In this document: piece by piece, positions 22,401-46,400 of the stretch | How positions within the stretch are numbered: the stretch's first letter is position 1 | Layout: each line of letters opens with the position of its first letter | Assembly: GCA_950097015.1 (NCBI GenBank) | Contig: CATNEN010000001.1 | Span: forward strand, 27,466,001 to 27,530,000 | Length of the DNA: 64,000 nt | DNA from: Macrostomum hystrix | Lineage: Eukaryota > Animalia > Platyhelminthes | Direction: 5' to 3' | Position numbers and translations under genes: made by a program | Notes under the pieces: generated by a model | Told to the model about the DNA's origin: nothing | Seen by the model: the letters and a program-made list of their open reading frames with translations, nothing else | Database searches by the model: none

Positions 22401-25400
22401 GTTGCTTTCTGTTTCAAAAGCAGGTTCTCAGTGTCCTTATTTTCCTGTGCGCCAGTGCCGCTGAGGGGAGAGAGAGAAAGTGAGAGTTCAGTGCAGAAAA
22501 CAGTCGACTATTGTACTGGAACAAAAAACTTTGAGCTCTTGGATTTCTTTGACAGAAATTGACTCAATTTCTTAAAAAAAACTAATTGAACCATTTCAAC
22601 GTTTGTCAGTATATCGCATTAGATTAGACTATACGTAGGTGGATTAACAATAAGAACGCTAGAAATTTGTCTCCAGCTAGCAGTCTCAGCCACACAGGTA
22701 GCAGTCTCAGCCACACAGGTAGTAGTCTCAGCCACACAGGTAGTAGTCTCAGCCACACAGGTAGTAGTCTCAGCCACGCAGCTAGTAGTCTCAGCCACGC
22801 AGGTAGCAGTCTCAGCCACACAGGTAGTAGTCTCAGCCACACAGGTAGTAGTCTCAGCCACACAGGTAGTAGTCTCAGCCACACAGGTAGCAGTCTCAGC
22901 CACACAGGTAGTAGTCTCAGCCACACAGGTAGTAGTCTCAGCCACACAGGTATTAGTCTCAGCCACACAGGTAGTAGTCTCAGCCACACAGGTAGTAGTC
23001 TCAGCCACACAGGTAGTAGTCTCAGCCACGCAGGTAGCAGTCTCAGCCACACAGGTAGTAGTCTCAGCCACACAGGTAGTAGTCTCAGCCACACAGGTAG
23101 TAGTCTCAGCCACACAGGTAGCAGTCTCAGCCACACAGGTAGTAGTCTCAGCCACACAGGTAGTAGTCTCAGCCACACAGGTATTAGTCTCAGCCACACA
23201 GGTAGTAGTCTCAGCCACACAGGTAGTAGTCTCAGCCACACAGGTAGTAGTCTCAGCCACGCAGGTAGCAGTCTCAGCCACACAGGTAGTAGTCTCAGCC
23301 ACGCAGGTATCAGTCTCAGCCACACAGGTAGTAGTCTCAGCCACGCAGGTAGCAGTCTCAGCCACACAGGTAGTAAACTCAGCCACACAGGTATTAGTCT
23401 CAGCCACACAGGTAGCAGTCTCAGCCTCGCAGGTAGTAGTCTCAGCCACACAGGTAGCAGTCTCAGCCACACAGGTAGTAGTCTCAGCCACACAGGTAGT
23501 AGTCTCAGCCACGCAGGTAGCAGTCTCAGCCACACAGGTAGTAGTCTCAGCCACGCAGGTAGCAGTCTCAGCCACACAGGTAGTAAACTCAGCCACACAG
23601 GTATTAGTCTCAGCCACACAGGTAGCAGTCTCAGCCACACAGGTAGTAGTCTCAGCCACACAGGTAGTAAACTCAGCCACACAGGTAGTAAACTCAGCCA
23701 CACAGGTATTAGTCTCAGCCACACAGGTAGCAGTCTCAGCCACACAGGTAATAGTCTCAGCCACGCAGGTAGCAGTCTCAGCCACACAGGTAGTAAACTC
23801 AGCCACACAGGTATTAGTCTCAGCCACACAGGTAGTAGTCTCAGCCACACAGCTAGTAGTCTCAGCCACGCAGGTAGCAGTCTCAGCCACACAGGTAGTA
23901 GTCTCAGCCACATAGGTATTAGTCTCAGCCACACAGGTAGTAGTCTCAGCCACACAGCTAGTAGTCTCAGCCACACAGCTAGTAGTCTCAGCCACGCAGG
24001 TAGCAGTCTCAGCCACACAGGTAGTAGTCTCAGCCACGCAGGTAGCAGTCTCAGCCACGCAGGTAGTAGTCTCAGCCACACAGGTAGTAGTCTCAGCCAC
24101 ATAGGTATTAGTCTCAGCCACACAGGTAGTAGTCTCAGCCACACAGGTAGTAGTCTCAGCCACACAGGTAGTAGTCTCAGCCACATAGGTATTAGTCTCA
24201 GCCACACAGGTAGTAGTCTCAGCCACACAGGTAGTAGTCTCAGCCACACAGGTATTAGTCTCAGCCACACAGGTAGTAGTCTCAGCCACACAGCTAGTAG
24301 TCTCAGCCACGCAGGTAGCAGTCTCAGCCACACAGGTAGTAGTCTCAGCCACATAGGTATTAGTCTCAGCCACACAGGTAGTAGTCTCAGCCACACAGGT
24401 AGTAGTCTCAGCCACACAGCTAGTAGTCTCAGCCACGCAGGTAGCAGTCTCAGCCACACAGGTAGTAGTCTCAGCCACGCAGGTAGCAGTCTCAGCCACG
24501 CAGGTAGCAGTCTCAGCCACACAGGTAGTAGTCTCAGCCACATAGGTATTAGTCTCAGCCACACAGGTAGTAGTCTCAGCCACACAGGTAGTAGTCTCAG
24601 CCACGCAGGTAGCAGTCTCAGCCACACAGGTAGTAGTCTCAGCCACGCAGGTAGCAGTCTCAGCCACGCAGGTAGCAGTCTCAGCCACACAGGTAGTAAA
24701 CTCAGCCACACAGGTATTAGTCTCAGCCACACAGGTAGCAGTCTCAGCCACACAGGTAGTAGTCTCAGCCACGCAGGTAGCAGTCTCAGCCACACAGGTA
24801 GTAAACTCAGCCACACAGGTATTAGTCTCAGCCACACAGGTAGTAGTCTCAGCCACGCAGGTAGCAGTCTCAGCCACACAGGTAGTAGTCTCAGCCACAT
24901 AGGTAGTAGTCTCAGCCACGCAGGTAGCAGTCTCAGCCACACAGGTAGTAGTCTCAGCCCCATAGGTAGTAAACTCAGCCACACAGGTATTAGTCTCAGC
25001 CACACAGGTAGTAAACTCAGCCACACAGGTAGCAGTCTCAGCCACACAGGTAGTAGTCTCAGCCACACAGGTAGCAGTCTCAGCCACGCAGGTAGTAGTC
25101 TCAGCCACGCAGGTAGTAAACTCAGCCACACAGGTATTAGTCTCAGCCACACAGGTAGTAAACTCAGCCACACAGGTATTAGTCTCAGCCACACAGGTAG
25201 CAGTCTCAGCCACGCAGGTAGTAGTCTCAGCCACACAGGTATTAGTCTCAGCCACACAGGTAGTAGTCTCAGCCACACAGATATTAGTCTCAGCCACACT
25301 GGTAAGCAGTCTCAGCCACGCAGGTAGTAGTCTCAGCCACGCAGGTAGTAGTCTCCAACGATGTCAATCAGGCTGGCAGGCGGATAGGCGAACCTGAGCA

Positions 25401-28400
25401 GGTGGCACAGCTGCTGCTGCTGAGAGAAGACCACAGCTGGACAGACAGGACTAGCTCCACACTGAGCGGTGCACTCGATGCTGGATGTCGCAGCGAATGT
25501 CCAGAAGGTGGCTGTTGTGGCCACCACCGTCTGACTTGGCCTTGGCTTCTTGATGAACGAATTCTTATCTGAAGCAGTTCGAGTGAGCTTCTCAGAGGTA
25601 ATTAAAAGCTCAAGTAGCAGTAACAGGTGAGCGAGACTCACTGGGGTAGGTCTGGGCGAACACCGAGTTGTGGTTCGCCGCGCCGCACTTCTGTGCTGAG
25701 TTTCCCGGACACGTATCGCTGCAGTCGGTCTCATTGGCAGCTCCTTGAGACCCGTAAGACAGGCCGCAGAAGCACTGGTACCTGTACTGCATTCCGAAGT
25801 AAGGAAACCCGCCCAGTGCGCAGACGTTGCTGCAGAGCTGGCGGGACATGCTGCCGCTCCAGCTGAACGGAATCCCGCCAATGTTGCTCACTTCATTAAG
25901 GGCATTCAAGTCTCTCTCACCTGACTTGTTGTCAATGAAGCAGCCCAGGTAGGAGAACTCAACCACCCTGGCAGCCGCGAGGCAGACAAGAACGCAGCAG
26001 AGAGCGGAGACCAGAAGCATGGTGCGATGCTGAATTTCTGATTCTGATTCAGCACCTGGCCTGGTTTCCAAAGCTCATTTATAGGATAACTAAGCAGGTG
26101 CTTTTTGTCCAGCTTCCAATCAGACAAACTGAGCTAGCCAATAGAAGGAGTTTTGAGCTGCATGTAGCTAGAGGTGTCAAAATTTCTACAGTGAGTACAG
26201 AGTGAGTAGTATTGAGTTCAAAATAGTGAGCACTGAATCAGTCTTCGTGAAAGATATTCGTAAATAAAAAACCTACCATTGTATCCCACTTAACGTGCGA
26301 CTTACATTGCTAAGATTAAATAAAATAGTAAGACACTCTTCATGGGCTTAACATCGAAGCAGCGATGATGTCTATTTTAAATATCTTTAAATATGTGCTG
26401 CAATTTGAGTCCCTTCATTCGCTGGAGCGCAGCTTATCACATGCTTGGCTATCAGGTCTGTCAATAATGTTCGGGCACACATGTAGGAATAGTCTCAGCC
26501 ACACAGGTAGTAGTCTCAGCCACACAGGTAGTAGTCTCAGCCACACAGGTAGTAGTCTCAGCCACACAGGTAGCAGTCTCAGCCACACAGGTAGTAGTCT
26601 CAGCCACACAGGTAGTAGTCTCATCCCCACAGGTAGTAGTCTCAGCCACACAGGTAGCAGTCTCAGCCCCACAGGTAGTAGTCTCAGCCACACAGGTAGC
26701 AGTCTCAGCCACACAGGTAGCAGTCTCAGCCACACAGGTAGTAGTCTCAGCCACACAGGTAGTAGTCTCAGCCACACAGGTAGTAGTCTCAGCCACACAG
26801 GTAGTAGTCTCAGCCACACAGGTAGTAGTCTCATCCCCACAGGTAGTAGTCTCAGCCACACAGGTAGCAGTCTCAGCCACGCAGGTAGTACTCGTAGTCT
26901 CCAGCGATGCTGCTCAGGCTGGCAGGTGGGTAGGCGAACCTGAGCAGGTGGCACAGCTGCAGCTGAGCGGAGAAGATCACAGCCTGGCAGTCATCCCTGG
27001 CTCCGCAAAGAGCCGAGCACTCGATGATGGAGGTCGCATTTCTGATCCAGAAAGTTTTTATCGTAGCCACCACCGTCAGACTGGGCTTTGGAGCTTTTGA
27101 CACGATTTGCTTGCCTGAAACATGATCAAGCGAGTTATGCCCAAACGAGTTCAGTCCATGGACTGGGTAGATGCCTTTTACTTTTACTTAATTGCAGGGG
27201 GGCCTGGGGCACTTGACGCACAAGCGCAGGAACGGCATGCCCCGAGGCCGGCGAACTAGGCAGGAGCCGCCCATCGCGCCATCTAGACCCCTGACACAGG
27301 CACCTCACACAGCCGCAAGCCAAGCGGGGAAGGGGGCGGCAGCCGGAGTGCCTGGACTTAGATGCCTGAAGGGTAGGGACGAGAGGACCAAGCCACGCGC
27401 GCAGACGGCTGGTGAAACCTCGCCGCTCAGAGCACGCATGGCTGGTGCACGGGCTCCACCCCCATACAACGCCTCACACCCGACCCTGCGCACAAACACA
27501 AACACAAACAAGCAGGCATGCTGACGGCAGGGGTTAAGCTATTTAAAATTAGCTTTGGTTGCACAGAATAAGGCGCATCTCCGCAAGTCACTACTTCGCA
27601 AACCTCCAACTATGCCCCGAAATAATCGTGACTTGGAGGGAGGAACGAACCAGCGACCATTGGAAAGTGAGGCAGCGACATTAGCCGCTAAACCACTCAC
27701 CCCCTTTGGGAGATGCCACACCCACCATAAATTACCCCAGCTAATGCTGGCACCTATTTAACAGCTGCGTGAGCTGTAGGAATGCAGATTCAAGTGTCCT
27801 GCTAAAGGACAGAGATAGTTCCAGTAGAGTCAAGAATTGAAACCCCGACCTTCATGTGAGCGTTCCACAGCAACTAGCTGAGGAGTTTACCAGGGTAGGT
27901 CTGCGCAAAAACGGAGTTTCGCCAGCTGTTGCCGCACTTCTGTGTCGAGTTTCCTGAGCACAGCATGCTGCAGTCGGTCTCTTTGGCAGCTCCCTTGGAG
28001 CCGTAGGACTGGCCGCAGTAGCACTGCCTGCCGTACTGCAGGCTAAAGTACGGGAATCCGCCCAGCGAGCAGACATTGCTGCAGAACTCGTGGGTCATGC
28101 TGTTGCTTGTCACACCGTATAAGAGAGTAGCGCTGCGTCCGCCAATGCTGCTCACACCGGCTAGTCCGTGGACGTCTATGGCGGATGTATCCACGAAGCA
28201 GCCGATGTAGGAGAACTCAGCCACCCTGGCAGCGGCGAGGACCGGCAGAACGAAGCAGAGAGTCGCGACCGGGGACGCGATCATGTTTTGAAGATTTTTA
28301 GCGTGTCTGTGGATGCATGGCCATCTTTTGCTTAGCATTTTATACATTTTAAGGGGCTGTTTTCCCACGAGTTGAAGACGATCGCGCTTGGCGTTGCAAG

Positions 28401-31400
28401 GTCCAAAAATGCTTGATGCATGAACGCTTGAACGCCTCCATGACTAGAGACGCTGTTCTAAACTTCCATTTTTACAACTGCATGAAAGTTCATTCCGACG
28501 CGGTATCACAGCATTTTGAGCTTCTTGCGAAGGTGTTGACTCCCTCTGACAATGATGTGCTGCTACTGGTGAAGGTGTTGCCTCCCTCTGACAATGATGT
28601 GCTGCTACTGGTGAAGGTGTTGACTCCCTCTGACAATGATGTGCTGCTACTGGTGAAGGTGTTGACTCCCTCTGACAATGATGTGCTGCTACTGGTGAAG
28701 GTGTTGACTCCCTCTGACAATGATGTGCTGCTACTGGTGAAGGTGTTAACTCCCTCTGACAATGATGTGCTGCTACTGGTGCATGTGCTTTGTTTAGAAT
28801 AGTTAAAAAACGAAACGGAACTTTGTTGATGTGTGAAATAATTATTTTCTTTTCCCGGGTATCAAAAGCATTAATATTAATACTGCAATTGGTTAAATTG
28901 GATGATTGATGTATGTCAGCTTTAAACTCAAAGTTCTCAAGACAAGACAATGAGACTCTCCTGGTCACGGATAAAGCGATATCCAGAGCACAAGATGCTG
29001 GGCCCCTGTTTAAGCGCCTTTTTACAGTCCTCAAGCTGGGCGCCAGTCTACAAGCAACTGCGACAGGAAACTGCGTTTCTTAGAAAATGCTTAGGGGGTG
29101 CAAATTTTGCCAACAAATACTCTGCGGAGATAAAATAATTTCACCTTTCACACTAAAATAGTTATGCATAACTTACATGTTATGCTGTTGCAAGAAATTT
29201 TACATAGCTAGTTTATTCCTTAAAATGTTATCTTTATACTATTACTAGCTTTTTTTGCCAGTTGTTTTTGGGGCAGAAATTTAAAGCAAAGCAGTAAGCA
29301 ATTCACGTCTCTGTATTAACTTTATAGTGAAGGTCACCATTTATTTATTTACTGCATTAATGAAAAGTGAAGAGTTTGTTGAAGGTCGTTTTAAGTAAAA
29401 AAGAAGTGAAAAGTTTGTCCAAACAGCCCCCTCTTGATTACTTCTTTAGAAACATGTCTCAGCCACTCCTCTATACAGTCAGTGGCAGATCCAGGAATTT
29501 TGTTTTGGGGCGGTCTGTCAGGGGAGCGCCATGAGAATCACAGAGGGGGTGCCAGCGGCCGAAAAAGGGCGCCAGGAGCCAAGAAAGGGCGCCAGCGGCT
29601 GAAAAACGGGAGCCAGCGGCTGAAAAAGGGGCGCCAGCGGCCGAAAAGGGGCGCCAGTGCTGCGACTGGCGCCCCTGGTGGGGGCATCTTATTCCCATGA
29701 TTAAAATTTAGGGGGGAGACTGCCCCCCCGCCCCCCCCCCTAAATCTGCCTCTGTATACAGTATGCATGTACACGCGTATACATAAGGAAAATAGCCATG
29801 GCATAACAATAACAATGTCAAAGAAACAAAATTAAACTGTTTCAGAGTTCAGAGTTAGACAGGTCAAGGTCAATTCGTGACTACTTTTCTATTAATTGCT
29901 TGCGAGTCACCTCAAGGCCTGGGGATACACCACATTCTTCGTTATTCCCCTTGGTGCAAAAATGAATAGGCCAGCTGGAGTTCCAACACGGGAGCAGGGG
30001 ACATAAAGCTGCCCATGCGAGAAGCAAGGAGTCTCCAGGTTGATGCCAGCCACCTTCAGCGACTGTCCCTGAGCCTTGTTAATAGTCATCGCAAAGCACA
30101 CTCTCACAGGGAACTGCAGTCGCTTGAACTGAAATGGCAGGTCCGTGGGGATAATTGGAATCCGGGGAACGAACACAGACTCTCCTCTGCCAGATCCAGT
30201 CATTATCGTGGCCTCAATCACGTGTGGGAAGAGCCGCCTGACTATCAGTCTGGTGCCGTTACACAGCCTTGGCGCATTCAGGTTGCGGAGGAGCATAATT
30301 GGTGCCCCAACTTTCAGCTGCAAGTTGTGCGATGGAGTTCCAGGAGGATCTAGAGAGTTCAGAAACTCAACAGGATACTCCACAGCGGTGTCATCAGTCA
30401 ACGTTGTATCAATTGACTTGTAGGTGAAAACTGCACCTGGCAACTCCTGAAGCAGTTGGTAGTTAATTTCGTTGGCGGCATCATTTCTAGGACACAGAAT
30501 TGCCCTCTCTGACAGCCCGGGCTTCGGCGCCCGGGGAAGGGAGGGGGTGGCTGTAATAAAATTTGGCCCGCAGAGTGGCGGAGGGGAGTTGGGGTGGCTG
30601 TCCTCGGAAAACAAAAAGTGACTCACTTTGAGATGATGCAGCTTTGCTCTGGATTGAGTAGAGATGTTCAAAATTGACAGCATTGTTGGAAAACATGTAA
30701 AGTGTAAGTGGATCAAATTTGGAGAAAATCTGACAAAGTGGGGCGACGATATGTCGAATTGAGTGATTTTTTGACGATTTTTGAGCAGTTTTTTGCACTT
30801 TTGAGCAGGAAGGAAATGATTTTTCGGGAATTTGAGTAGCCTATTGCACTCAGCGTAGGTGGTTTTAGGTATGTGCAAAGTTTGGTGCGATTTGGTTGAG
30901 CGGTTTCGGCGTCTATAAAGACAAAAGGTTGTACACACACACACACACACACAGACAGACAGAGTTTTCACTTTTATATATATAGATACTAGCTTTTTTG
31001 CCCGTTGTTTTAGGGGCAGAAATTTAAAGCAAAGCAGTAAGCAATTGTTGTGTCTCACGGCCCTACAGCCTTTGGGGAAGCTGCGACAGCCCAGGTCCCA
31101 GTCGGGTGCCACCCGTCCCGTCTCCCAGGGAATGGCAGAAAAGAGAGCGCAGGGTACTTACGGCAGACGACTGGCCCAGCGAGGCTTGAACTTGGATTGA
31201 ATTGAAGGCTGTTTTAATTAATGAGCAATGCAGGGTGAACAGGCGGAACGGTTGAGACTCGGGTCTCTTCGCAGAGTCAATATATATTTAATTAACAAGT
31301 CTTCGCCCGGGGCTTACGCAAGCGCCGGCCCACGGGTGAAATGTACATTTAACAATTAGGGGGTAGGCTGGGCGATCGATACATATGACTGGGGTGGGGC

Positions 31401-34400
31401 ACGCTAGCCGACTGGCGGGGCAGGGAATGAGAAAGATATGAAAATGATAGGGCAGAGGTGAGGGCTGCGTCACAACATCCTCCCCTCCTTAAAAAAACGG
31501 TGGGAAGTACGAAAACAAAGACTACGAGTATTAGAAGAAAAGAAAAACGGCATTACAAATGAAGAAAAAAAATGATAAGCGGATTAGCAATTGGGTAAGA
31601 ATGCAGTGGGCAGTGAACGAAAACAAGACGCTCAAACGGATGACAAAAAAAACATGTTGATGACGCAATCATGTAGGATTAACGGAAAGGAGAAATAACA
31701 CGAATCGCATGATATATGTAGATGACACATGAGCGCAAAATATTTTAGGGTTGAAACGTCAGTTAGTTTTTTTTTTAGAAAAATGATAATCGTGCTAGTA
31801 ATGTATTCACGATACTCGGCTAGCACAGTTCCTGCAGCTTCGTCACGTCGCGGTATCCAACCGGCTCGCTCCGACCTCGGTTCTGCCAAAGTCGCTCGCC
31901 TCACGCAGTCCTGGCTCGAAACACAGCAGTGTCCCAGCCGAGCTGAATGCCGAACTCGGGTCGCTCGCTGCCGGGCAGCCTGTCGACCCCGAGACCCGCT
32001 GACTCGCCTGCCAGCTCGCTGACTCGTGCGCGCCGACTCCCGTGGCTAGGCCAATGGTCGCTCTCGCATTTTGCCTTGGTTGCCGCCGAACTCGCTCGCA
32101 CTGCCGTTGACCGGTCATCAAGCGCTCTTCAGCTCACAGCGACTGCAGGTGACGCCTTCGTAGCATCTCCGTCGCTCCAGTTCGCTGACTTGACGCTGAC
32201 TGGTTGGTGGTGCTTTGCTGTGGCGCAGCGGTGTCTCCTGCCGTATCTTGCTGCTTCCGGGTCTTCCGCCTCTGGTGTCCTCCACCTGGCCCTCCACCAC
32301 CCCAATGGGAAACGGGCCGAGCGACACCCAACATGAAACCCAGGGAGTGCAGCTTCCCGGACAGGTACCCCTAACTGCTAAGACGAACTGGACGCAGAAC
32401 TGTAGCTAAATAGCGCACGCGTAATACAGTAAAAATGTGTCAGTTGCAACGCAAGTACATGTACTCGTAAATAAATACTAAAATGAAGGAAGTTTTTGTG
32501 ATTTTAGATGTTTTATTAGTCTTTTTTGCGTTTTGACAGTTTTAATGTATTTTTTTGTATTTTTTTCCTTATTGTTTTTAGTGTAATTTATTACAGTGCT
32601 AGTACAGCACAGGGTTGCCGTAGCGCACCGGTGGATTTCCCCTTCCAGGCCGGAGTCTGCGCGGTGACGGCGGAGCAGGAATCTCCTGCAGTGGCGGCGC
32701 TGCACCTTGAATGGGTTCGTTCTGCGGCACTGGTGCTTCGTGCCCCGGCGGCGGCGGCACATAGACGAAGTCAGACTCGGCGTCATCTGACTCGGACTCA
32801 TCCTGCTGAGGTGTCCCTCTAGCTACTTCACCCTGTACTTGGCGCGCCATCCGCCTTTGCCGTCTCTGTTTTGGAGCTTGCAGCTCAGGGGGCCGCTGTG
32901 GAATTTTTCTAAGATTGTTGTAATGGACTATTCTAGTTTTTCGACTGTTCTGGTGGCGAATTTTGAAATTGACATCTGAGATTTTCTCTATGACCTCAGC
33001 CGGGCCTTTCCAATATTTGTGGAACTTGGCAACTTCGCTGGGCTGCAGGGCCGGCGAGTATTCAAGCACAATATCCCCAACATCTATGGTCGGACCTCGA
33101 ACCCTGGAGTCGTAGTTGACTTTCTGCTTGCGCTGATATTGTTGCAGATTTTGCCTTACGTGCGAGTGCGCGTCTGCCAGCCTGTCACCCAGAGATAGCA
33201 GGTACTCAGGCGCATTAGCTGGCAGCGTTTCAGGCAAGTTCCCTATGTCGACCGGAAGGCGCATCTCTTTCGCATACAGCATGTAATATGGGGTATACCC
33301 CGTGCCACGATGGACGCTGCTGCGATAGGCCAGAAGCGAGGGGCCAATCAAGTCCTCCCAGTCCGCCTCAGCCTCGCTCTGCCTGCACTTAATCATGTTT
33401 TTTAGCGTTTTGTTAAAGCTTTCCGCCTGGCCATCGGCCATGGGGTGATAAGACGTAGTTCGGCACTTTTTCACTGCCATCAGCTGACACAGCTGCTTCA
33501 CGAGAAGTGATTCGAAGTTGGTGCCTTTGTCGGTTATCAGGAATTCTGGGCAGCCGAACTGGGCGATCCAGTTGTCAAAAATCGCCTTCGCCACGGTGCT
33601 CGCACGCTGATTCGAGAGCGCCACAGCGACCGGCCACTTCGTGAATGAGTCCTGAATGGTCAGCACAAACCTGGAGCCATTCTTCGATCGAGGCAACGGG
33701 CCCACAATGTCACTCATGATGCGCTGGAATGGAGCTTCCGATACTATCGGCTGCAGCGGCGCTCTGCCAGCTTTCCCCGGCTTGGCTCTGGCGCAATGCA
33801 CGCAGCTCCGGCAATACTCCTCGATCTTTCTCGAGAGCCCTGGCCACCAGAATCTACTCTTAACTTTCGCCTGAGTCTTCTTCACTCCAAGATGACCTCC
33901 AGCAACCCCGTCATGTAATTCACTGAAGACCCTCTGGAACAGACTCGGCGGCAAGACAATTTTTGGCTTCTCCGAGTCAGGTCCCTTGACGACCAAGACC
34001 TGCGCCTCCAGCCTGATCAGCTGGCGTTGAGACCATAGACATCTTTCCTCCCATGACATCACAGGCGGCGCAATCAGCTCAGAGTTACCATTGTGCACAA
34101 AACTGCGGATTACTTCCAGTTTGGACTCAGTTTCCTGGGCTGTTTGAATTTCCTCCCTGCCCAGTCCACTGCAAAGGACGGTATTAACGCCACGAGAGTC
34201 CGCCAGCGTACAGCTCGGACAGGTTTCGTGCCCGGAATGCTTCCTGTATTTGCGAGACAAAGAGTCCGCGTTGCCGTGGAGTTTCCCGGCTCGGTGTTCT
34301 ATGGTGAACTCGTAATTTTGCAGCATCTGCAGCCAGCGAGCACACTGGCCCTCTGTATCACGAAGATTCGTGAGCCACTGCAGCGCTTTGTGGTCAGACC

Positions 34401-37400: not shown

Positions 37401-40400
37401 CAGCACTCTCTCTCACTCTACAACCAGACGTCAAAAAAACTGAATCACCGGTGCGACAGCCCAGGTCCCAGTCGGGTGCCACCCGTCCCGTCTCCCAGGG
37501 AATGGCAGAAAAGAGAGCGCAGGGTACTTACGGCAGACGACTGGCCCAGCGAGGCTTGAACTTGGATTGAATTGAAGGCTGTTTTAATTAATGAGCAATG
37601 CAGGGTGAACAGGCGGAACGGTTGAGACTCGAGTCTCTTCGCAGAGTCAATATATATTTAATTAACAAGTCTTCGCCCGGGGCTTACGCAAGCGCCGGCC
37701 CACGGGTGAAATGTACATTTAACAATTAGGGGGTAGGCTGGGCGATCGATACATATGACTGGGGTGGGGCACGCTAGCCGACTGGCGGGGCAGGGAATGA
37801 GAAAGATATGAAAATGATAGGGCAGAGGTGAGGGCTGCGTCACAACACAATTCACGTCTCTGTATTAACTTTATAGTGAAGGTCACCATTTATTAATTTA
37901 CTGCATTAATGAAAAGTGAAGAGTTTGTTTAAGGCCGTTTTAAATAAAAATAAATGAAAAGTTTGTCCAAACAGCCCCCTCTTGATTACTTCTTTAGAAA
38001 CATGTCTCTTAGCCACTCCTCTATACAGTCAGTGGCAGATCCAGGAATTTTGTTTTGGGGCGGTCTGTCAGGGGAGCGCCATGAGAATCACAGAGGGGGT
38101 GCCAGCGGCCGAAAAAGGGCGCCAGGAGCCAAGAAAGGGCGCCAGCGGCTGAAAAAGGGGTGCCAGCGGCCGAAAAGGGGCGCCAGTGCTGCGACTGGTG
38201 CCCCTGGTGGGGGCATCTTATTCCCATGATTAAAATTTTGGGGGGCGACTGCGCCCCCCCGCCCCCCCCCTAAATCTGCCTCTGTATACAGTATGCATGT
38301 ACACGCGTATACATAAGGAAAATAGCCATGGCATAACAATAAGAATGTCAAAGAAACAAAATTAAACTGTTTCAGAGTTCAGAGTTAGACAGGTCAAGGT
38401 CAATTCGTGACTACTTTTCTATTAATTGCTTGCGAGTCACCTCAAGGCCTGGGGATACACCACATTCTTCGTTCTTCCCTTTGGTGCGAAAATGAATAGG
38501 CCAGCTGGAGTTCCAACACGGGAGCAGGCGACATAAAGCTGCCCATGCGAGAAGCAAGGAGTCTCCAGGTTGATGCCAGCCACCTTCAGCGACTGTCCCT
38601 GAGCCTTGTTAATAGTCATCGCAAAGCACACTCTCACAGGGAACTGCAGTCGCTTGAACTGAAATGGCAGGTCCGTGGGGATAATTGGAATCCGGGGAAC
38701 GAACACAGACTCTCCTCTGCCAGATCCAGTCATTATCGTGGCCTCAATCACGTGTGGGAAGAGCCGCCTGACTATCAGTATGGTGCCGTTACACAGCCTT
38801 GGCGCATTCAGGTTGCGGAGGAGCATAATTGGTGCCCCAACTTTCAGCTGCAAGTTGTGCGATGGAGTTCCAGGAGGATCTAGAGAGTTCAGAAACTCAA
38901 CAGGATACTCCACAGCGGTGTCATCAGTCAACGTTGTATCAATTGACTTGTAGGTGAAAACTGCACCTGGCAACTCCTGAAGCAGTTGGTAGTTAATTTC
39001 GTTGGCGGCATCATTTCTAGGACACAGAATTGCCCTCTCTGACAGCCAGTCAACGTCAGCATATCGAGAGAAATAGGCTGGCTGGAGAGAAATATCAACC
39101 GGAGAGCCCTGCGCACTGGGACGCCACCGCACTCACCGCAATTAGTCTCAGTGCTGCTTGGGGGCCAGAAGACAGTCTAGGGGTTTGGGCTGTGTACATT
39201 CACGGCTTGAAATACAATGTACAGTCTGGGGCTTCGGCGCCCGGGGAAGGGAGGGGGTGGCTGTAATAAAATTTGGCCCGCAGAGTGGCGGAGGGGAGTT
39301 GGGGTGGCTGTCCTCGGAAAACAAAAGTGACTCACTTTGAGATGATGCAGCTTTGCTCTGGATTGAGTAGAGATGTTCAAAATTGACAGCATTGTTGGAA
39401 AACATGTAAAGTGTAAGTGGATCAAATTTGGAGAAAATCTGACAAAGTGGGGCGACGATATGTCGAATTGAGTGATTTTTTTACGATTTTTGAGCAGTTT
39501 TTTGCCCTTTTGAGCAGGAAGGAAATGATTTTTCGGGAATTTGAGTAGCCTATTGCACTCAGCGTTGGTGGTTTTAGGTATGTGCAAAGTTTGGTGCGAT
39601 TTAGTTGAGCGGTTTCGGCGTCTATAAAGACAAAAGGTTGCACACACACACACACACACACAGACAGACAGACAGACAGAGTTTTCACTTTTATATATAT
39701 AGATTTACTAAGCCTATATATTAAAACATTGACAGGGTCTTGCCATACAATAATAAGCAATCATACAATCATAAGGCTAGGGTCTAAAGAGAAGCTTCAT
39801 CGGCGGAAATAGACGAACCTATAAATAAACTAATATCAATAGAGAAGATTTTGATCCGCCTCAATTCACTTGAATTTTGCATAAAAATAATTAAAATTTC
39901 TAATATACATTGTGTACTTTTAGGCCTTTTCAAAAAGTACCTTTTAGTGTACTTAAATAGGCGTAAAGCAGCCTCTTAGACCTTTTCTAAGAAATCTTGT
40001 CTTCCGTCCTTTAACTCCGAAGTGGTGCTTGTGACCACCTTCAAAACTAATGCTTTAGCCTACCCTTGCCACTTCATTCTGAGCTTCATTTGTCTGCTCA
40101 ATCAATCACCTGTTGCTTGTCCCGCCGCCTCGCTGTCACATTCGCTCCTCGCTCGCCGCCTTTGCCACCAGCAGCTTCATCCACAAGCACCGATCGATGC
40201 TTACCTCGACATCTGGCCCGCCATCTATTAGCCAGCTTTCCAAGACTCTTCATAGCACGAACATTGAAAATCACCTCAACGATTTTTGACACATACTCAC
40301 ACACACACACACACCATAAATATCCAATCTGCTTCTTATTACCAGTTTTCTTCTCAATCTTTGAATAAACAAACTAGCGTGGCATTCTCCTATAGCTACT

Positions 40401-43400
40401 TTAAGTAGCTGATTAAATAAAAGTATATTTGGTAGTATTCTCGGGTTTCGCCTTCTTGTTGGAGCTATGGACTTCTGAACAATAATAGGCCGGGAGTTCA
40501 AATCGCAGATACAATTTTATCTGTTCACTTGACTCTGAAGTGGGTACCAGCTTCAGTTATGGTAGATGCTATCAACCAGGGTTCATTTATAATAAACAAT
40601 TTTAACAATAAGATTCAGTAGTATTAAGTAGTATTGTAAAGCGATTTTTAATTCCTTAGTCTCGACCATAGACTACGCATTAAACGCGTGCATTAAACTT
40701 CCCGCGGTCCCTAAGCGTTTAATGTACAAGGGCAATATCAAGGGCAATATCAAAATTGCTCTATATCAAGAGGTTGTAGCCTAGTGGTTAGGGCGTCGGA
40801 CTAACGACTTGAAGGTCGGGGGTTCGATTCCCGACTCCCCTGAACAATTTGTGTCCTTTAGCAAGACACTTAACTCTGCATTGCTTCAGTTCACCCAGCT
40901 GTTAAATGGGTACCAGCATCAGCTGGGATAATTGAAGGTGGGTGTGGCGTCCCCCCAGTCCATGGACTGAACATCTGTACGCAGCCTTCAGATGTGCCGC
41001 GCAATAGCTGCGGCTGTGCTGTCGGCTGCACATCTGGCCCGATTGGGGCAGGTGTAATTAGTTATTAATTATCATTATTAATCTATATCAAACTCTATGG
41101 CGAATGCATATCGGTAAAAAAATCAAATAATTGACAATAAGATCATAAAAATAATAAATAATAATAGCCGACATTGTCAGATGATGAATTTTTGTGAGCA
41201 GAAATAGAAAAGAAAGGAAGTAGCGGGTATTTGAAAACCAGACGTGGTCTCTCTCTGCTGTTAAGACAAATACGAGACAGATTGTACAGGCAGTCGCTAG
41301 ATACAGAAACTTAGAAAGCTTCGTGCAGCGCTCGCAGCTCTTCCTGAGCAGTGCTCATCGTGTTACTCTGCTTACTCTGTGAAATTCGAAATCGACAATC
41401 ACATTGTAGCAAACTGTCCAGAAGTAATATTTTGAGCCGTTTTCCTGGAAAGGCAAACGCAAGCTGTCTCGAAAACTTATTTTGAATGACTTAATTCAAC
41501 CGAGTCAAACACAAGACTTTATACAACGATAGCCTCAAATTGCCTCAATGAGGCGTTTCAAGCTGTCAATCATCGCTCATTTCGCTTTGCCAGCAGCTCT
41601 TTCCTAACTTTTGCTTTCAGTTCTGCATCGGTAAGTCTCACCAGACCGAAGCGATTTCATTCACATTCGTTTCGTTATCCGCATCACTTGATGAACTGCC
41701 ATGGACTAATAGGGCCAGCAACTGCACACTGTATTTTGTAGACTGAGAAAATAGTATTACAGAACAGACAGGTAAAATACAGGTACTCTGTTGTGCAGCC
41801 GAAAACACAGCCGCAGCTGTTGCGCGGCGCATCTAAAGGCTGCGTACCAGTGTTCAGTCCGTGGACTGGGTATACCAGCTAATGCGGGTACCCGTTTAAT
41901 AATTAAGTGAACTGAAGCCAAGCAGAGTTAATTGACTTGCTAAAGGATTGAAATTGTTCCAATAGAGTCAGGAAACGAACCCCCAACGTTTAAGTCCGTC
42001 GTTCAAAACACAAGGCTATAACTCCCCTGATTGGTACTGCTGCAGGATTTGAGATTTGGCCTCACTAACTGTTGCAACGTTAATTTTTAAAGGCATGCTA
42101 ATGAACTTGACTAATAAAAAAGCCAGTTAGTATTCTCAGTCACACAGGTACTTGTCTCAGACAGCCATGCAGGTAGTAGTCTCAGCCCCACAGGTAGTAG
42201 TCTCAGCCACACAGGTAGTAGTCTCAGCCACACGGGTAGTACTCTCAGCCACGCAGGTAGTAGTCTCAGCCACGCAGGTAGTAGTCTCAGACACACAGGT
42301 AGTAGTCTCAGCCACGCAGGTAGTAGTCTCAGCCACACAGGTAGTAGTCTCAGCCACGCAGGTAGTAGTCTCAGCCACGCAGGTAGTAGTCTCAGCCACG
42401 CAGGTAGTAGTCTCAGACACACAGGTAGTAGTCTCAGCCACGCAGGTAGTAGTCTCAGCCACGCAGGTAGTAGTCTCAGACACACAGGTAGTAGTCTCAG
42501 CCACGCAGGTAGTAGTCTCAGCCACGCAGGTAGTAGTCTCAGCCACACAGGTAGTAGTCTCAGCCACACAGGTAGTAGTCTCAGCCACACAGGTAGTAGT
42601 CTCAGCCACACAGGTAGTAGTCTCAGCCACACAGGTAGTAGTCTCAGCCACACAGGTAGTAGTCTCAGCCACACAGGTAGTAGTCTCAGCCACACAGGTA
42701 GTAGTCTCAGCCACACAGGTAGTAGTCTCAGCCACACAGGTAGTAGTCTCAGCCACACAGGTAGTAGTCTCAGCCACACAGGTAGTAGTCTCAGCCACAC
42801 AGGTAGTAGTCTCAGACACACAGGTAGTAGTCTCAGCCACACAGGTAGTAGTCTCAGCCTCGCAGGTAGTAGTCTCAGCCATGCAGGTAGTAGTCTCAGC
42901 CACACAGGTAGTAGTCTCAGCCACGCAGGTAGTAGTCTCAGCCACACAGGTAGTAGTCTCAGCCACACAGGTAGTAGTCTCAGCCACACAGGTAGTAGTC
43001 TCAGCCACGCAGGTAGTAGTCTCAGCCACACAGGTAGTAGTCTCAGCCACACAGGTAGTAGTCTCAGCCACACAGGTAGTAGTCTCAGCCACACAGGTAG
43101 TAGTCTCAGCCACACAGGTAAGTAGTCTCAGCCACGCAGGTAGTAGTCTCAGCCACACAGGTAGTAGTCTCAGCCACGCAGGTAGTAGTCTCAGCCACAC
43201 AGGTAGTAGTCTCAGCCACGCAGGTAGTAGTCTCAGCCACGCAGGTAGTAGTCTCAGCCACGCAGGTAGTAGTCTCAGCCACGCAGGTAGTAGTCTCAGC
43301 CACGCAGGTAGTAGTCTCAGCCACACAGGTAGCAGTCTCAGCCACACAGGTAGTAGTCTCAGCCACACAGGTAAGTAGTCTCAGCCACACAGGTAGTAGT

Positions 43401-46400
43401 CTCAGCCACACAGGTAAGTAGTCTCAGCCACACAGGTAGTAGTCTCAGCCACACAGGTAGTTGTCTCAGCCACACAGGTAGTAGTCTCAGCCACACAGGT
43501 AGTAGTCTCAGCCACACAGGTAGTAGTCTCAGCCACACAGGTAGTAGTCTCAGCCACACAGGTAGTAGTCTCAGCCACACAGGTAGTAGTCTCAGCCACA
43601 CAGGTAGTAGTCTCAGCCACACAGGTAGTAGTCTCAGACACACAGGTAGTAGTCTCAGCCACACAGGTAGTAGTCTCAGCCTCGCAGGTAGTAGTCTCAG
43701 CCATGCAGGTAGTAGTCTCAGCCACACAGGTAGTAGTCTCAGCCACGCAGGTAGTAGTCTCAGCCACACAGGTAGTAGTCTCAGCCACACAGGTAGTAGT
43801 CTCAGCCACACAGGTAGTAGTCTCAGCCACGCAGGTAGTAGTCTCAGCCACACAGGTAGTAGTCTCAGCCACACAGGTAGTAGTCTCAGCCACACAGGTA
43901 GTAGTCTCAGCCACACAGGTAGTAGTCTCAGCCACACAGGTAAGTAGTCTCAGCCACGCAGGTAGTAGTCTCAGCCACACAGGTAGTAGTCTCAGCCACG
44001 CAGGTAGTAGTCTCAGCCACGCAGGTAGTAGTCTCAGCCACGCAGGTAGTAGTCTCAGCCACGCAGGTAGTAGTCTCAGCCACGCAGGTAGTAGTCTCAG
44101 CCACACAGGTAGCAGTCTCAGCCACACAGGTAGTAGTCTCAGCCACACAGGTAAGTAGTCTCAGCCACACAGGTAGTAGTCTCAGCCACACAGGTAAGTA
44201 GTCTCAGCCACACAGGTAGTAGTCTCAGCCACACAGGTAGTTGTCTCAGCCACACAGGTAGTAGTCTCAGCCACACAGGTAGTAGTCTCAGCCACACAGG
44301 TAGTAGTCTCAGCCACACAGGTAGTAGTCTCAGCCACACAGGTAGTAGTCTCAGCCACACAGGTAGTAGTCTCAGCCACACAGGTAAGTAGTCTCAGCCA
44401 CACAGGTAGTAGTCTCAGCCAGCCATGCAGGTAGTAGTCTCAGCCACACAGGTAGTAGTCTCAGCCACACAGGTAGTAGTCTCAGCCACACAGGTAAGTA
44501 GTCTCAGCCACACAGGTAGTAGTCTCAGCCAGCCATGCAGGTAGTAGTCTCAGCCACACAGGTAGTAGTCTCAGCCATGCAGGTAGTAGTCTCCAACGAT
44601 GTCAATCAGGCTGGCAGGCGGGTAGGCGAACCTGAGCAGGTAGCACATCTGCTGCTGCTTGTTAAAAATGAGAGCCTGGCAGTTTTCAGTAGCGCGGCAC
44701 TGAGCAGCACACTCAAATTTCATCTTGGCATTCCGGATCCAAACAGGTGTACTCGTGGACACAACAGTCAGAATGGGCATTGACTTTTTGTAAAGTAACC
44801 GCTGTCTGAAAAATTTAATAACATGAATTTTTAACCTCAGAGCTGCTAAACAGAAGTATTAGTCATGCTAAGTCAGGGATTGTGTACCTGGATAGGTCTG
44901 AGCAAACACCGAGTTCCGATCACCTGCTCCGCACTTCTGCTTGGAGTTACCTGAGCACGCCTTGTTACATTCGGTGTCACTGGCATTTCGCTGCGATCCG
45001 TAGGAGAGGCCGCAGAAACACTGAGAGCTGAACTGCACACCAAAATAAGGAAATCCACCAAGGGAGCAGACACCGCTGCAGTACTCATGCGTCATCACAC
45101 TGCTCTGCACACCTGCAGAAAGACTGAATGCGAATTCACCGATGCTGCTAACACCTGCCAGCGCATTCAAGTCTCTCATGTTCATTGTGTTGTCACGGTA
45201 GCAGCCGATGTAAAAGTACTGAGCCACCCTGGCAGTTGTGAGGCCCAGCAGTGTGCTACAGATAGCCGAGAACAGAAGCATGATTTGGTCGTAACGATCT
45301 GAAAAGCTCCCAGTGTCACGGCTTATGCTCATTGATAGCTTTATTTATACCCTGGAGAACCTGTCCTGTTTGGCTTCATCCCATTGGGTACTTAAAGATT
45401 TGAAAACAGTTTTTCACTAATTCTACGAGTATATGAAAAAAACGTGTTCATGAGGCTGAAAAAAATATCTGCTTTGGGTGTGTTTAGCACAGGTGTTTAG
45501 CACTAGGTGTTTGGCACAGGTGCTCAAACAGGAACTTGAAAGCTTTTATTTGTGAAGCGAAGCATGTACTCTTGCCAAATCCACCCTCTTTGTCGACTCT
45601 CTCATCACCCAGCTCTGCTCAGCTCGGCCTTGAGCTGAACGAGCCATGGCTCGTGACCAGCGCCGGTGCCTACGTGTGGAACTACGGCCAACACCTGCTG
45701 GCCATGGGCCGGCACAACCTGCTGACGCAGCACCTGCTGCCGCTAGTCGACTGCCTGCGCCGAGGCGGCCACGATGGCCGGACGGAGCTGCTGGTGAACG
45801 TGTGCACGGCTGTGGGCTACGGGCTCATCAGGCAGTGGCTGCCACCGCTGCCGAAGAGACAGACTGCTGGCGAGGGCGAGGACGGAGGTAGGAAAATGTC
45901 GAAGATCTTTGGCTGAATCTACAGAGCTGGGAGGCTGAGTGGCGGTTCGACTCTCACACCAATGTCCCCGAGCTCGATTCCGAGGTCGGTTTCAATCATT
46001 GTGGGCCGAAGCCGCGGGGAGACGGCTTAGAATTAGAGCCTTAGTCTCACAACTTAAAGGTCCACTGGCGGGGAGACGGCTTAGAATTAGAGCCTTAGTC
46101 TCACAACTTAAAGGTCCACTGGCGGGGAGACGGCTTAGAATTAGAGCCTTAGTCTCACAACTTAAAGGTCCACTGGCGGGGAGACGGCTTAGAATTAGAG
46201 CCTTAGTCTCACAACTTAAAGGTCCATTGGAACAATTTGTGTCCTTTAGCAAGACACTGAACTCTGCATTGCTTCAGTTCACCCAGCTGTTAAATGGGTA
46301 CCAGCATCAGCTGGGATAATTTAGGTTTGGGTGATGCTTCCCCCCAGTCCATGGACTGAACATCGTCCTTCAGATGCGCCGTGCCATGGCTGCTTCTGTG

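What the first reader, a model, noticed from the sequence alone, without database searches (positions are those of the whole stretch)
22675..44594. Three paralogous genes each end in a tandem array of their own last six codons plus stop codon
Seen: WSC-A, -B and -C end ...YYL(R/H)G-TGA and continue directly into about 127, 19 and 117 copies of GAC TAC TAC CTG YGT GGC TGA. The first unit is the coding C-terminus itself, and the GGAGAC/TGAGAC microhomology could have seeded the duplication. The proteins, introns and flanks have clearly diverged, yet the three arrays share one consensus, including TGT where the genes have CGT or CAT. The unit has no AATAAA, so the mRNA must cross the array or end in it. 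Inference: one ancestral array was kept through triplication and homogenised by gene conversion or selection. It could act as a 3'UTR element (multivalent RNA scaffold, small-RNA source against the antisense CFAP46 pre-mRNA), or as a conversion anchor, since the last ~20 codons of A and C are also nearly identical.
Basis: partly seen in the sequence, partly recalled or inferred. Interest (0 to 1): 0.85.

Follow-up and report, generated by a model that had tools for sequence, protein, structure and literature searches.

The report
Stop-codon minisatellite behind flatworm WSC-PAN genes
In a Macrostomum-type flatworm, the last six codons plus the stop codon of small secreted WSC-PAN genes have been copied head-to-tail into 21-base arrays of up to 127 copies in this window, and recombination between gene copies appears to keep these arrays alike; it is a neat case of a minisatellite whose seed can be named, but no function is shown.

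Summary
Three minus-strand WSC+PAN genes end DYYLRG / DYEYYLRG / DYYLHG-TGA. Each runs without a gap into 127, 19 and 116 copies of GACTACTACCTGTGTGGCTGA, and the first unit is the coding end itself.

The scan had already noted this on other DNA of the same genome (s1-262240, s1-262309). It is family-wide, not a local triplication:
- Of 29 paralogs examined, 15 carry an array with the identical consensus (13 after removing two exact C1/C15 mirror copies).
- One paralog carries a drifted array (5 of 21 positions differ, at least 238 copies).
- An 8-gene clade has the same GDYYLRG-TGA end but no array.
- Arrays lie almost only behind family genes, in two clusters.

Evidence for fast turnover and exchange between loci:
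- Near-identical duplicate genes carry 8 versus 73 units.
- Homology between sister genes stops at the array.
- Rare variants and multi-unit strings are shared by arrays of non-sister genes.
- Genes A and C share a private tract in their last 88 nt (95.5% identity versus about 74% upstream).

My best reading is a minisatellite seeded at a GAGAC microhomology and kept uniform by unequal and ectopic recombination. Transcription, 3'UTR inclusion and any RNA function could not be tested, because no RNA run was listed. Gene C has an apparent one-base frame break.

The parts
25642..26020 (-). Gene A exon 1: signal peptide plus WSC domain; phase-1 donor after 25642
   Evidence: Pfam WSC E 1.8e-15
25333..25568 (-). 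Gene A exon 2: PAN domain, ends GDYYLRG-TGA; 236 nt, in frame with exon 1
   Evidence: Pfam PAN_1 26 bits, cut-off 21.4
22674..25355 (-). Array A: 127 units of 21 bp. The first unit (25353-25333) is the last six codons plus the stop of gene A. Higher-order repeats are present.
   Evidence: TRF; parses
27891..28284 (-). Gene B exon 1 (WSC), ATG at 28284, phase-1 donor
   Evidence: tblastn; translation
26873..27114 (-). Gene B exon 2 (PAN), ends GDYEYYLRG-TGA; 242 nt, in frame
   Evidence: Pfam PAN_1 24.4 bits
26490..26893 (-). Array B: 19 units. The first unit (26893-26873) is coding. The distal end lies 470 bp upstream of gene A's ATG.
   Evidence: TRF
44888..45281 (-). Gene C exon 1 (WSC), phase-1 donor
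   Evidence: Pfam WSC E 4e-16
44571..44805 (-). Gene C exon 2 (PAN), ends GDYYLHG-TGA. It is 235 nt, one base short of the frame set by exon 1. The frames change around the A5 run at 44785-44789, so this is either a real frameshift or a homopolymer error in the assembly.
42124..44593 (-). Array C: 116 units, with an internal duplication of about 40 units. CAT units like the gene's own recur inside it.
   Evidence: TRF
25333..25420 (-). Last 88 nt of gene A. They are 95.5% identical to gene C (44571-44658), against about 74% further upstream. The stretch ATTGACATCGTTGGA is private to A and C.
15146..15607 (+). Open frame holding a CFAP46 exon (matches residues 355-447 of PDB 9ijj_A)
   Evidence: E 6.8e-19
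19055..19378 (+). Open frame holding a CFAP46 exon (residues 549-613); the last recognised exon before the WSC genes
   Evidence: E 1.9e-17
45488..45913 (+). Open frame holding a CFAP46 exon (residues 724-802); the first recognised exon after the WSC genes
   Evidence: E 3.9e-11

Best explanation
This is a non-coding 21-bp minisatellite whose seed is the last six codons plus the stop codon of a secreted WSC-PAN gene.

Inferred origin: the terminal 21 bp is bracketed by a 5-bp direct repeat (GGAGAC...TGAGAC). One slip or microhomology-mediated tandem duplication would give two units, and unequal exchange could then expand them.

Shown:
- The arrays sit directly behind the stop codon of many clustered paralogs.
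- They change length quickly.
- They carry higher-order repeats.
- They share one consensus, although the genes' introns and flanks can no longer be aligned.

Inferred mechanism: the arrays, together with the well-conserved last 70-90 nt of the coding sequence, act as homology for unequal and ectopic recombination between paralogs. This recombination does four things. It keeps the arrays uniform (concerted evolution). It copies short tracts into the coding 3' end (A and C). It lets a unit type enter the gene end (one paralog ends DYYLCG). It swaps the DNA distal to the array, so homology between sister genes stops at the array.

The gene's own last unit mostly stays CGT (Arg), most likely because the protein end GD(Y/F)(Y/F)xRG is under selection, as M. 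lignano homologs indicate. The non-coding units settled on TGT.

No function of the array is shown. I take it to be a neutral or mildly costly by-product that probably lengthens the 3'UTR.
For: Anatomy in the window.

Census:
- Of 29 paralogs examined, 15 have an array with exactly the consensus GACTACTACCTGTGTGGCTGA, and CGT units are the second commonest type.
- A BLAST of array B against the whole genome finds arrays only at C1 26.88-27.55 Mb and C15 2.03-2.08 Mb, plus two weak hits of 77% and 69% elsewhere. Nearly all of them abut a family gene.

Fast turnover:
- Genes 99.5% identical, with homologous distal flanks, carry 8 versus 73 units.
- A 96%-identical pair carries 69 units versus none.

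Exchange between loci:
- A and its 95% sister align from -824 to the stop and no further.
- A and C are 95.5% identical over the last 88 nt against about 74% upstream. Seven diagnostic sites are shared only by these two.
- The double-substitution unit GTTTAC... occurs 9 times in array A and 13 times in an array 600 kb away behind a non-sister gene.
- Two head-to-head neighbour arrays behind non-sister genes share 4-unit strings that include a 25-bp variant.
- Proximal units copy the gene's own codon: CGA x5 behind a CGA gene, CAT units in array C.

Arguments against strict selection on the unit:
- One array has drifted at 5 of 21 positions and still grew to at least 238 copies.
- There is no excess RNA structure.

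Protein-level constraint on the gene end: M. lignano homologs end GDYFVRG, GDYYSRG, GEFYARG.

Permissive setting: 31% of the window is minisatellite.
Against: - No read data could be laid on the arrays, so neither their lengths nor their transcription is independently checked.
- Shared single-substitution variants could be recurrent mutations. The evidence from multi-unit sharing rests on a few array pairs.
- Synonymous codon identity in the last 30 codons is raised (0.75-0.9, against 0.44-0.55 in the first half of the exon and 0.46-0.71 in the WSC exon). This holds in array-less paralogs too. It could reflect a functional nucleotide element rather than conversion.
- Among 53 distinct variant unit types, only 3 of 90 differences hit the TGA (naive binomial p 6e-4). 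The drifted array keeps TGAGACTA.TACCTG. Both hint at constraint on part of the unit.
- The direction and age of events cannot be set, because the tree has no outgroup.
Confidence: 0.6

Rival explanations
1. The 21-nt unit is a functional cis-element in the RNA (for example a protein or small-RNA binding site at the end of the coding sequence). Its amplification in the 3'UTR is kept by selection as a multivalent element.
For: - Synonymous sites in the last ~30 codons, including the unit, are unusually conserved even in paralogs without arrays.
- The TGA and the unit boundary are hit less often than expected among distinct variant types.
- The drifted array keeps TGAGACTA.TACCTG.
- No poly(A) hexamer lies inside arrays. 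In several paralogs AATAAA or ATTAAA follows 72-118 nt after the array end, similar to the stop-to-signal distance of 85-306 nt in array-less paralogs. So a transcript probably has to cross the array.
- An earlier scan note reports 3'UTR inclusion for one paralog (s1-262240; I did not check it).
Against: - Copy number ranges from 0 to over 200 among close relatives, and is 8 versus 73 in near-identical duplicates. This is not what a tuned dose would look like.
- Orphan arrays exist without a gene.
- There is no excess fold.
- No RNA data are available here.
- Gene C, with 116 units, may be broken.
Confidence: 0.17
2. Each array arose on its own from the conserved terminal 21-mer of its gene, with no exchange between loci. 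The shared consensus then reflects only the conserved seed plus parallel C-to-T change at the CpG of CGT.
For: - The seed GACTACTACCTGCG(T/A)GGCTGA is conserved at nucleotide level across the family, including array-less genes.
- Proximal units often copy the gene's own codon.
- Small arrays with a CGT majority exist (7 C to 4 T in C1_27342253p).
- TGT and CAT are both CpG-transition products of CGT.
Against: - All arrays of at least 14 units have TGT as the major type and none has CAT.
- CpG depletion is only mild (observed/expected 0.82).
- Double-substitution and indel variants, and multi-unit strings, are shared between arrays of non-sister genes.
- The A-C coding tract shows that exchange does occur.
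Confidence: 0.1
3. The arrays are translated, either by stop-codon readthrough (DYYLCG repeats) or by a frame change into the two open frames (TTTCVAE or LLPVWLR repeats), giving a repeat-tailed protein.
For: - The period is a multiple of three.
- Two sense frames stay open for about 890 codons across array A.
- The TTTCVAE frame would look like a Thr-rich mucin repeat.
Against: - Every unit in A and B, and 115 of 116 units in C, keeps the in-frame TGA. Readthrough would therefore stop again after 7 codons.
- M. lignano homologs end at the same ...RG.
- No splice or frameshift signal was found.
- Open frames follow automatically from a unit without stops in those frames.
Confidence: 0.03
4. 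The arrays, or their lengths, are assembly artefacts.
For: Long tandem arrays are error-prone to assemble. Gene C's single-base frame break lies in an A5 homopolymer, which shows that base-level errors are possible.
Against: - The arrays have distinct, locus-specific variant orders and higher-order repeats.
- The same 47-unit array is assembled twice (C1_27543927m and C15_2072910p) with one unit differing.
- Another reader of the scan saw the phenomenon on other pieces of this genome.
Confidence: 0.03

Closest known systems
Human F7 intron 7 (IVS7) 37-bp VNTR minisatellite (PMC1557585, abstract seen)
   Same: It is a minisatellite whose first element spans a functional gene boundary, so every further unit carries a copy of that signal. 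In F7 the signal is the exon 7 / intron 7 5' splice site; here it is the last codons plus the stop codon.
   Different: F7 is a single locus, the array is intronic, and the repeated signal is a splice donor. Here the repeated signal is a stop codon with six codons, the array lies behind the coding sequence, and the same array type sits behind at least 15 paralogs and evolves in concert.
Microhomology-mediated tandem duplication (10.1101/2020.03.03.972455 / PMC8639346, abstract seen)
   Same: It is a plausible birth step: a short segment bracketed by a few bases of direct repeat (GAGAC, 21 bp apart) is duplicated in tandem and can expand or revert.
   Different: That work describes reversible duplications inside S. 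pombe genes under drug selection, not long stable arrays. The birth step here is inferred, not observed.
Concerted evolution of tandem arrays and multigene families by unequal crossing-over and gene conversion (general knowledge: rDNA, satellite families, subtelomeric families)
   Same: The consensus is identical across loci while unique flanks diverge. Derived variants are shared, higher-order repeats are present, and copy number changes rapidly.
   Different: The homogenised unit is derived from, and still overlaps, the coding end of each gene. As a result, conversion tracts and unit variants spill into the protein's C-terminus (His in gene C, Cys in C1_27543927m).
Trypanosoma brucei VSG cassettes: 70-bp repeats upstream and a conserved 3' end as conversion boundaries (my own knowledge, not checked here)
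   Same: It is a functional analogy only: repeat arrays plus a conserved gene end give the homology that lets paralogs of a secreted or surface protein family recombine.
   Different: There is no evidence here for programmed switching, expression sites or antigenic variation. The repeats lie downstream, not upstream. Nothing here was tested against VSG.

Membership tests
Minisatellite / VNTR | Head-to-tail copies of a 10-100 bp unit | tested here: met
   21-bp period; 127.7, 19.1 and 116.7 copies; 91-95% matches
Minisatellite / VNTR | Copy number varies between related copies or alleles | tested here: met
   8 versus 73 units behind 99.5%-identical duplicate genes; 69 versus 0 behind a 96% pair. 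Allelic variation was not testable because no reads were available.
   Arrays occur only in two clusters (C1 26.88-27.55 Mb, C15 2.03-2.08 Mb). Nearly all start at the stop of a WSC-PAN gene. Three orphan sites lie inside the same clusters, and one of them sits behind a WSC exon whose PAN exon is gone. Two weak hits (77% on C11, 69% on C38) could not be fetched.
WSC domain proteins (PF01822) | Match to the Pfam model above the gathering score | tested here: met
   57.3 and 59.5 bits against a cut-off of 27.8 for exon 1 of A and C. B exon 1 is 59% identical to A.
PAN/Apple domain (PF00024 PAN_1) | Match to the Pfam model above the gathering score | tested here: met
   26.0, 32.5 and 24.4 bits against a cut-off of 21.4 for exon 2 of A, C and B
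Concerted evolution by exchange between loci | Repeats at different loci are more alike than the unique DNA around them | tested here: met
   The consensus is identical in 15 arrays. Introns and flanks of A, B and C give no blastn alignment.
Concerted evolution by exchange between loci | Derived variants or tracts shared against the gene tree | tested here: met
   A-C private tract. GTTT unit shared by A and C1_26895060m. The string g-r-m-h is shared by neighbours 26944666m and 26947823p. This rests on few pairs, and recurrence of single changes is not excluded.
3'UTR regulatory element | The array is part of the mature mRNA | not testable with these tools
The look-up of sequencing runs listed no run, so read laying could not be used.
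3'UTR regulatory element | Sequence or structure conserved beyond what homogenisation gives | tested here: inconclusive
   Fold z -1.6. One array drifted at 5 of 21 positions. However, the TGA and the unit boundary are under-hit and synonymous sites at the gene end are conserved.
CFAP46 (host gene on the + strand) | Sequence match of flanking + strand exons to solved CFAP46 chains, in collinear order | tested here: met
   Four open frames match 9ijj_A residues 355-447, 549-613, 724-802 and 1205-1262, in order. Residues 614-723 were not located, so one or more small exons could lie between 20.2 and 45.4 kb.

The most novel reading that the evidence does not exclude
The terminal ~90 nt of these genes, with the 21-nt unit at its core, is a functional nucleotide element. 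The arrays would then be used by the animal in one of two ways. They could be recombination handles that let a large secreted WSC-PAN family (over 130 PAN-exon matches in the genome) shuffle and expand, in the manner of repeat-flanked surface-protein cassettes. Or they could be a multivalent 3'UTR element whose dose sets mRNA fate. The raised synonymous conservation at the gene end, also seen in array-less paralogs, and the near-invariant TGAGAC boundary are the observations that plain drift does not explain.
Probability: 0.17. Interest if true: 0.75.

Novelty: new variant of a known kind. Interest (0 to 1): 0.5.

Why it matters
For most minisatellites the seed sequence is unknown. Here the seed is visible (six codons plus the stop, bracketed by a 5-bp microhomology). 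Related genes show the states from no array through a handful of units to more than 200.

Because the first unit is still coding, repeat dynamics feed straight into a protein's C-terminus (Arg to His or Cys) and into the last 90 nt of the gene. This makes the locus a compact natural system for measuring turnover, conversion tract lengths and the cost or use of kilobase-long repeat 3'UTRs in an animal that can be kept in culture.

It also warns annotators: an in-frame stop repeated 100 times behind a gene is neither an assembly error nor a recoding signal.

Tried and rejected
**Blocked or blank steps**
- RNA evidence: the look-up of sequencing runs (kind rna) listed none, so read laying was never used.
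About 20 further paralogs and the weak hits on C11 and C38 were therefore not fetched.
- The search for homologous proteins with exon 1 of A found nothing. The HMMER library search with exon 2 did find M. lignano relatives.

**Ideas tested and not supported**
- Subtelomeric location: no (TTAGGG)6 match is listed on contig C1, so I do not call the cluster subtelomeric.
- A decayed second unit behind the stop of the array-less clade: the evidence is weak (p 0.01-0.8 per gene), so the idea was dropped. It holds only for C15_2069665m (p 0.02).
- RNA structure of the array: z -1.6, not significant.
- Strong CpG decay as the cause of TGT: CpG observed/expected is 0.82, only mild depletion.
- Readthrough or frameshift translation: judged unlikely.

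**Method notes**
- Spliced gene models were searched exon by exon, by reference.
- Only the PAN exon was used for a tree; the WSC exon was analysed separately for codon identity and was not joined to it.
- Two BLAST runs without masking the arrays gave only repeat noise and were redone with masking.

Full report

Yes. Tandem Repeats Finder reports three 21-bp arrays at 22674-25355 (127.7 copies), 26490-26890 (19.1) and 42124-44593 (116.7). On the minus strand the unit is GAC TAC TAC CTG TGT GGC TGA.

The minus-strand sequence and its translation show three genes that end ...IVGDYYLRG-TGA (A)...AGDYEYYLRG-TGA (B) and ...IVGDYYLHG-TGA (C). Each continues straight into the array, so the first unit of each array is the coding end. 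The unit is bracketed by GGAGAC upstream and TGAGAC at its end.

Gene models, all on the minus strand:

| Gene | Exon 1 | Exon 2 |
|---|---|---|
| A | 26020-25642 | 25568-25333 |
| B | 28284-27891 | 27114-26873 |
| C | 45281-44888 | 44805-44571 |

- Exon 1 encodes a signal peptide and a WSC domain. Exon 2 encodes a PAN domain. Both score above Pfam's cut-offs.
- Exon 2 of C is one base short of the frame set by its exon 1. The two frames meet around an A5 run at 44785-44789. C is therefore either a recent pseudogene or carries a homopolymer error in the assembly.
- I searched the models exon by exon, by reference.

**2. How diverged are the genes, and how alike are the arrays?**

- A, B and C are 56-59% identical in exon 1 and 60-69% in exon 2 at the protein level.
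- With the arrays masked, blastn aligns only exon pieces between them (73-79%). Introns and flanks do not align.
- My unit-by-unit parse nevertheless gives the same 21-nt consensus for all three arrays. TGT is the main type at codon 5 and CGT is second. All units in A and B, and 115 of 116 in C, keep the TGA.
- Array similarity is therefore far above the neutral divergence of the paralogs.

**3. The wider picture**

The window is G000:C1:27466001-27530000, in a 220-Mb assembly of 42 contigs. Earlier notes of this scan call the genome a Macrostomum-type flatworm and had already flagged the same phenomenon on other pieces of it (s1-262240, s1-262309). The nearest database proteins are M. lignano WSC-domain proteins at up to 54% identity to the PAN exon.

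- The PAN exon has 133 matches in the genome.
- Fifteen of the 29 (13 after removing two exact C1/C15 mirror copies) have an array with exactly the same consensus, ranging from 8 to 127 units.
- A clade of eight genes at C1 25.29-26.38 Mb, and two more at 25.94 Mb, have the same or a very similar end (mostly GDYYLRG-TGA, same codons) but no array. There the stop is followed by TCC, GTC, TGT or TTC rather than GAC.
- A BLAST of array B against the genome finds arrays only at C1 26.88-27.55 Mb and C15 2.03-2.08 Mb, plus two weak hits on C11 and C38.
- Nearly all arrays start at the stop of a family gene. Of the orphan sites, one (present in both C1 and C15) follows a WSC exon and part of its intron with the PAN exon missing. 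The other two lie about 1 kb from family genes.
- So the 21-mer is not a dispersed satellite.
- No (TTAGGG)6 match is listed on C1, so I do not call the cluster subtelomeric.

**4. Turnover**

On a PAN-exon DNA tree (last unit excluded), array presence needs at least two changes on well-supported branches and four on the best tree.

- C1_26884893m and C1_26895060m are 99.5% identical and have homologous distal flanks, yet carry 8 and 73 units. Their first five units are the same.
- C1_26944666m has 69 units. Its 96%-identical relative C15_2069665m has only the coding unit plus one decayed unit.
- The arrays contain higher-order repeats. One example is a block of about 40 units present twice in array C.
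- The mirror copies C1_27543927m and C15_2072910p have the same 47 units with one difference. This also speaks for faithful assembly.

**5. Exchange between loci**

- (a) A's closest relative is not B or C but C1_26947823p, about 540 kb away. The two align at 95% from 136 bp upstream of the ATG to the stop. Homology then ends in the array, and the distal flanks are unrelated. The same holds for the 26944666m / 2069665m pair.
- (b) A and C are 95.5% identical over the last 88 nt but about 74% identical upstream. Within that stretch, ATTGACATCGTTGGA (encoding IDIVG) is shared by A and C only. A's sister and C's nearest relative both have the common AGCAGCAT... type. That gives seven diagnostic sites.
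- (c) Rare unit types cross the gene tree. GTTTACTACCTGTGTGGCTGA, a double change, occurs 9 times in A and 13 times in C1_26895060m. The head-to-head neighbours 26944666m and 26947823p, which are non-sister genes, share 4-unit strings including a 25-bp insertion variant.
- (d) The gene end takes part in the exchange. Five CGA units follow a gene that ends CGA. CAT units recur in array C. One gene (C1_27543927m) itself ends DYYLCG with TGT.

**6. What argues for or against function?**

Against strict selection on the unit:
- The array behind C15_2048367p has drifted to GACTAGTACCTGATTGAATGA (5 of 21 positions) and still has at least 238 copies.
- Copy number is erratic.
- Orphan arrays exist.
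- The array RNA folds no better than shuffles (z -1.6).

For some constraint:
- Identical codons among identical residues rise to 0.75-0.9 in the last 30 codons. The figures are 0.44-0.55 in the first half of the PAN exon and 0.46-0.71 in the WSC exon. The rise is also seen between array-bearing and array-less genes.
- Among 53 distinct variant unit types, only 3 of 90 differences hit the TGA (naive p 6e-4).
- The drifted unit keeps TGAGACTA.TACCTG.

These points can also come from conversion and from the way variants spread, so I count them as unexplained rather than as support.

The protein end itself is conserved across species: M. lignano homologs end GDYFVRG, GDYYSRG and GEFYARG. That explains why the coding unit mostly keeps Arg.

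No AATAAA or ATTAAA lies inside any array. In some paralogs such a hexamer follows 72-118 nt after the array, much as it follows the stop by 85-306 nt in array-less genes. This fits a 3'UTR position, but A and B have no canonical hexamer within 600 nt. No RNA run was listed, so transcription across the arrays is untested here.

**7. Context**

- The + strand carries CFAP46. Open frames at 15146-15607, 19055-19378, 45488-45913 and 50600-50983 match residues 355-447, 549-613, 724-802 and 1205-1262 of a solved CFAP46 chain.
- Genes A, B and C therefore lie antisense between recognised CFAP46 exons.
- A Ty3/gypsy-type pol ORF (32599-36618) flanked by two Pif1-like ORFs lies between B and C.
- Arrays at other loci are not in CFAP46, so a specific link to that gene is unlikely.
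- About 31% of the window is minisatellite, which makes this a permissive setting for arrays in general.

**8. Verdict**

This is a real and tidy minisatellite built on a stop codon. It is best explained by a microhomology-seeded duplication, followed by rapid unequal exchange and recombination between the clustered paralogs. Function is open.

The closest published analogue I found is the human F7 intron-7 minisatellite, whose first unit spans the exon-intron boundary (PMC1557585).

The finding is a new variant of a known kind. The scan had already met it elsewhere in this genome.

Noticed in passing
window 44785-44805 (minus strand): Gene C exon 2 is one base out of frame with exon 1. The change of frame falls at an A5 homopolymer. 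It is either a recent pseudogene or a homopolymer error in the assembly.
   Followed up: partly
window 29907-39132: A Ty3/gypsy-type pol ORF (RT, RNase H, integrase; 32599-36618, minus strand) lies between two near-identical Pif1-2B-domain ORFs (29907-31112 and 38437-39132). The same 20-bp tandem repeat lies beside each (29547-29657, 38097-38186). It looks like a retroelement nested in, or flanked by, duplicated helicase-bearing elements. I observed it only.
   Followed up: partly
window 46790-47215 (+ strand): A 25-bp minisatellite (17 copies, 99% matches) has a unit that holds a 5' splice-site-like CAGGTGAGT inside the CFAP46 gene. It is a second repeat in this window that may copy a gene signal, as in the F7 case.
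   Followed up: no
whole window: About 31% of the 64 kb is minisatellite. There are 18 separate arrays with periods of 3-54 bp, the largest being 5.6 kb of a 30-mer at 53627-59203.
   Followed up: no
L032 1693-6701 (G000:C15:2048592-2053600): The array behind paralog C15_2048367p has drifted to GACTAGTACCTGATTGAATGA. It has at least 238 copies and runs off the fetched locus. Each of its units carries two in-frame stops (TAG and TGA).
   Followed up: partly
G000:C1:27537990-27545500 versus G000:C15:2071400-2078829: The end of contig C15 mirrors, in inverted order, part of the end of contig C1. Genes are 100% identical, distal flanks are 99.3-99.8% identical, and the same 47-unit array is present. 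It is either a haplotig or a very recent inverted duplication.
   Followed up: partly
window arrays, + strand reading: Read on the CFAP46 strand, each unit is TCAGCCACACAG|GTAGTAGTC. That places about 260 copies of a weak donor-like CAGGTA and an acceptor-like TCTCAG inside CFAP46 intron sequence. The drifted array keeps CAGGTA too.
   Followed up: no
all paralog C-termini: The proteins end in ...RG in this genome and in M. lignano. A C-terminal Gly after a basic residue is the classic substrate for peptide amidation. This is my own speculation and is untested.
   Followed up: no
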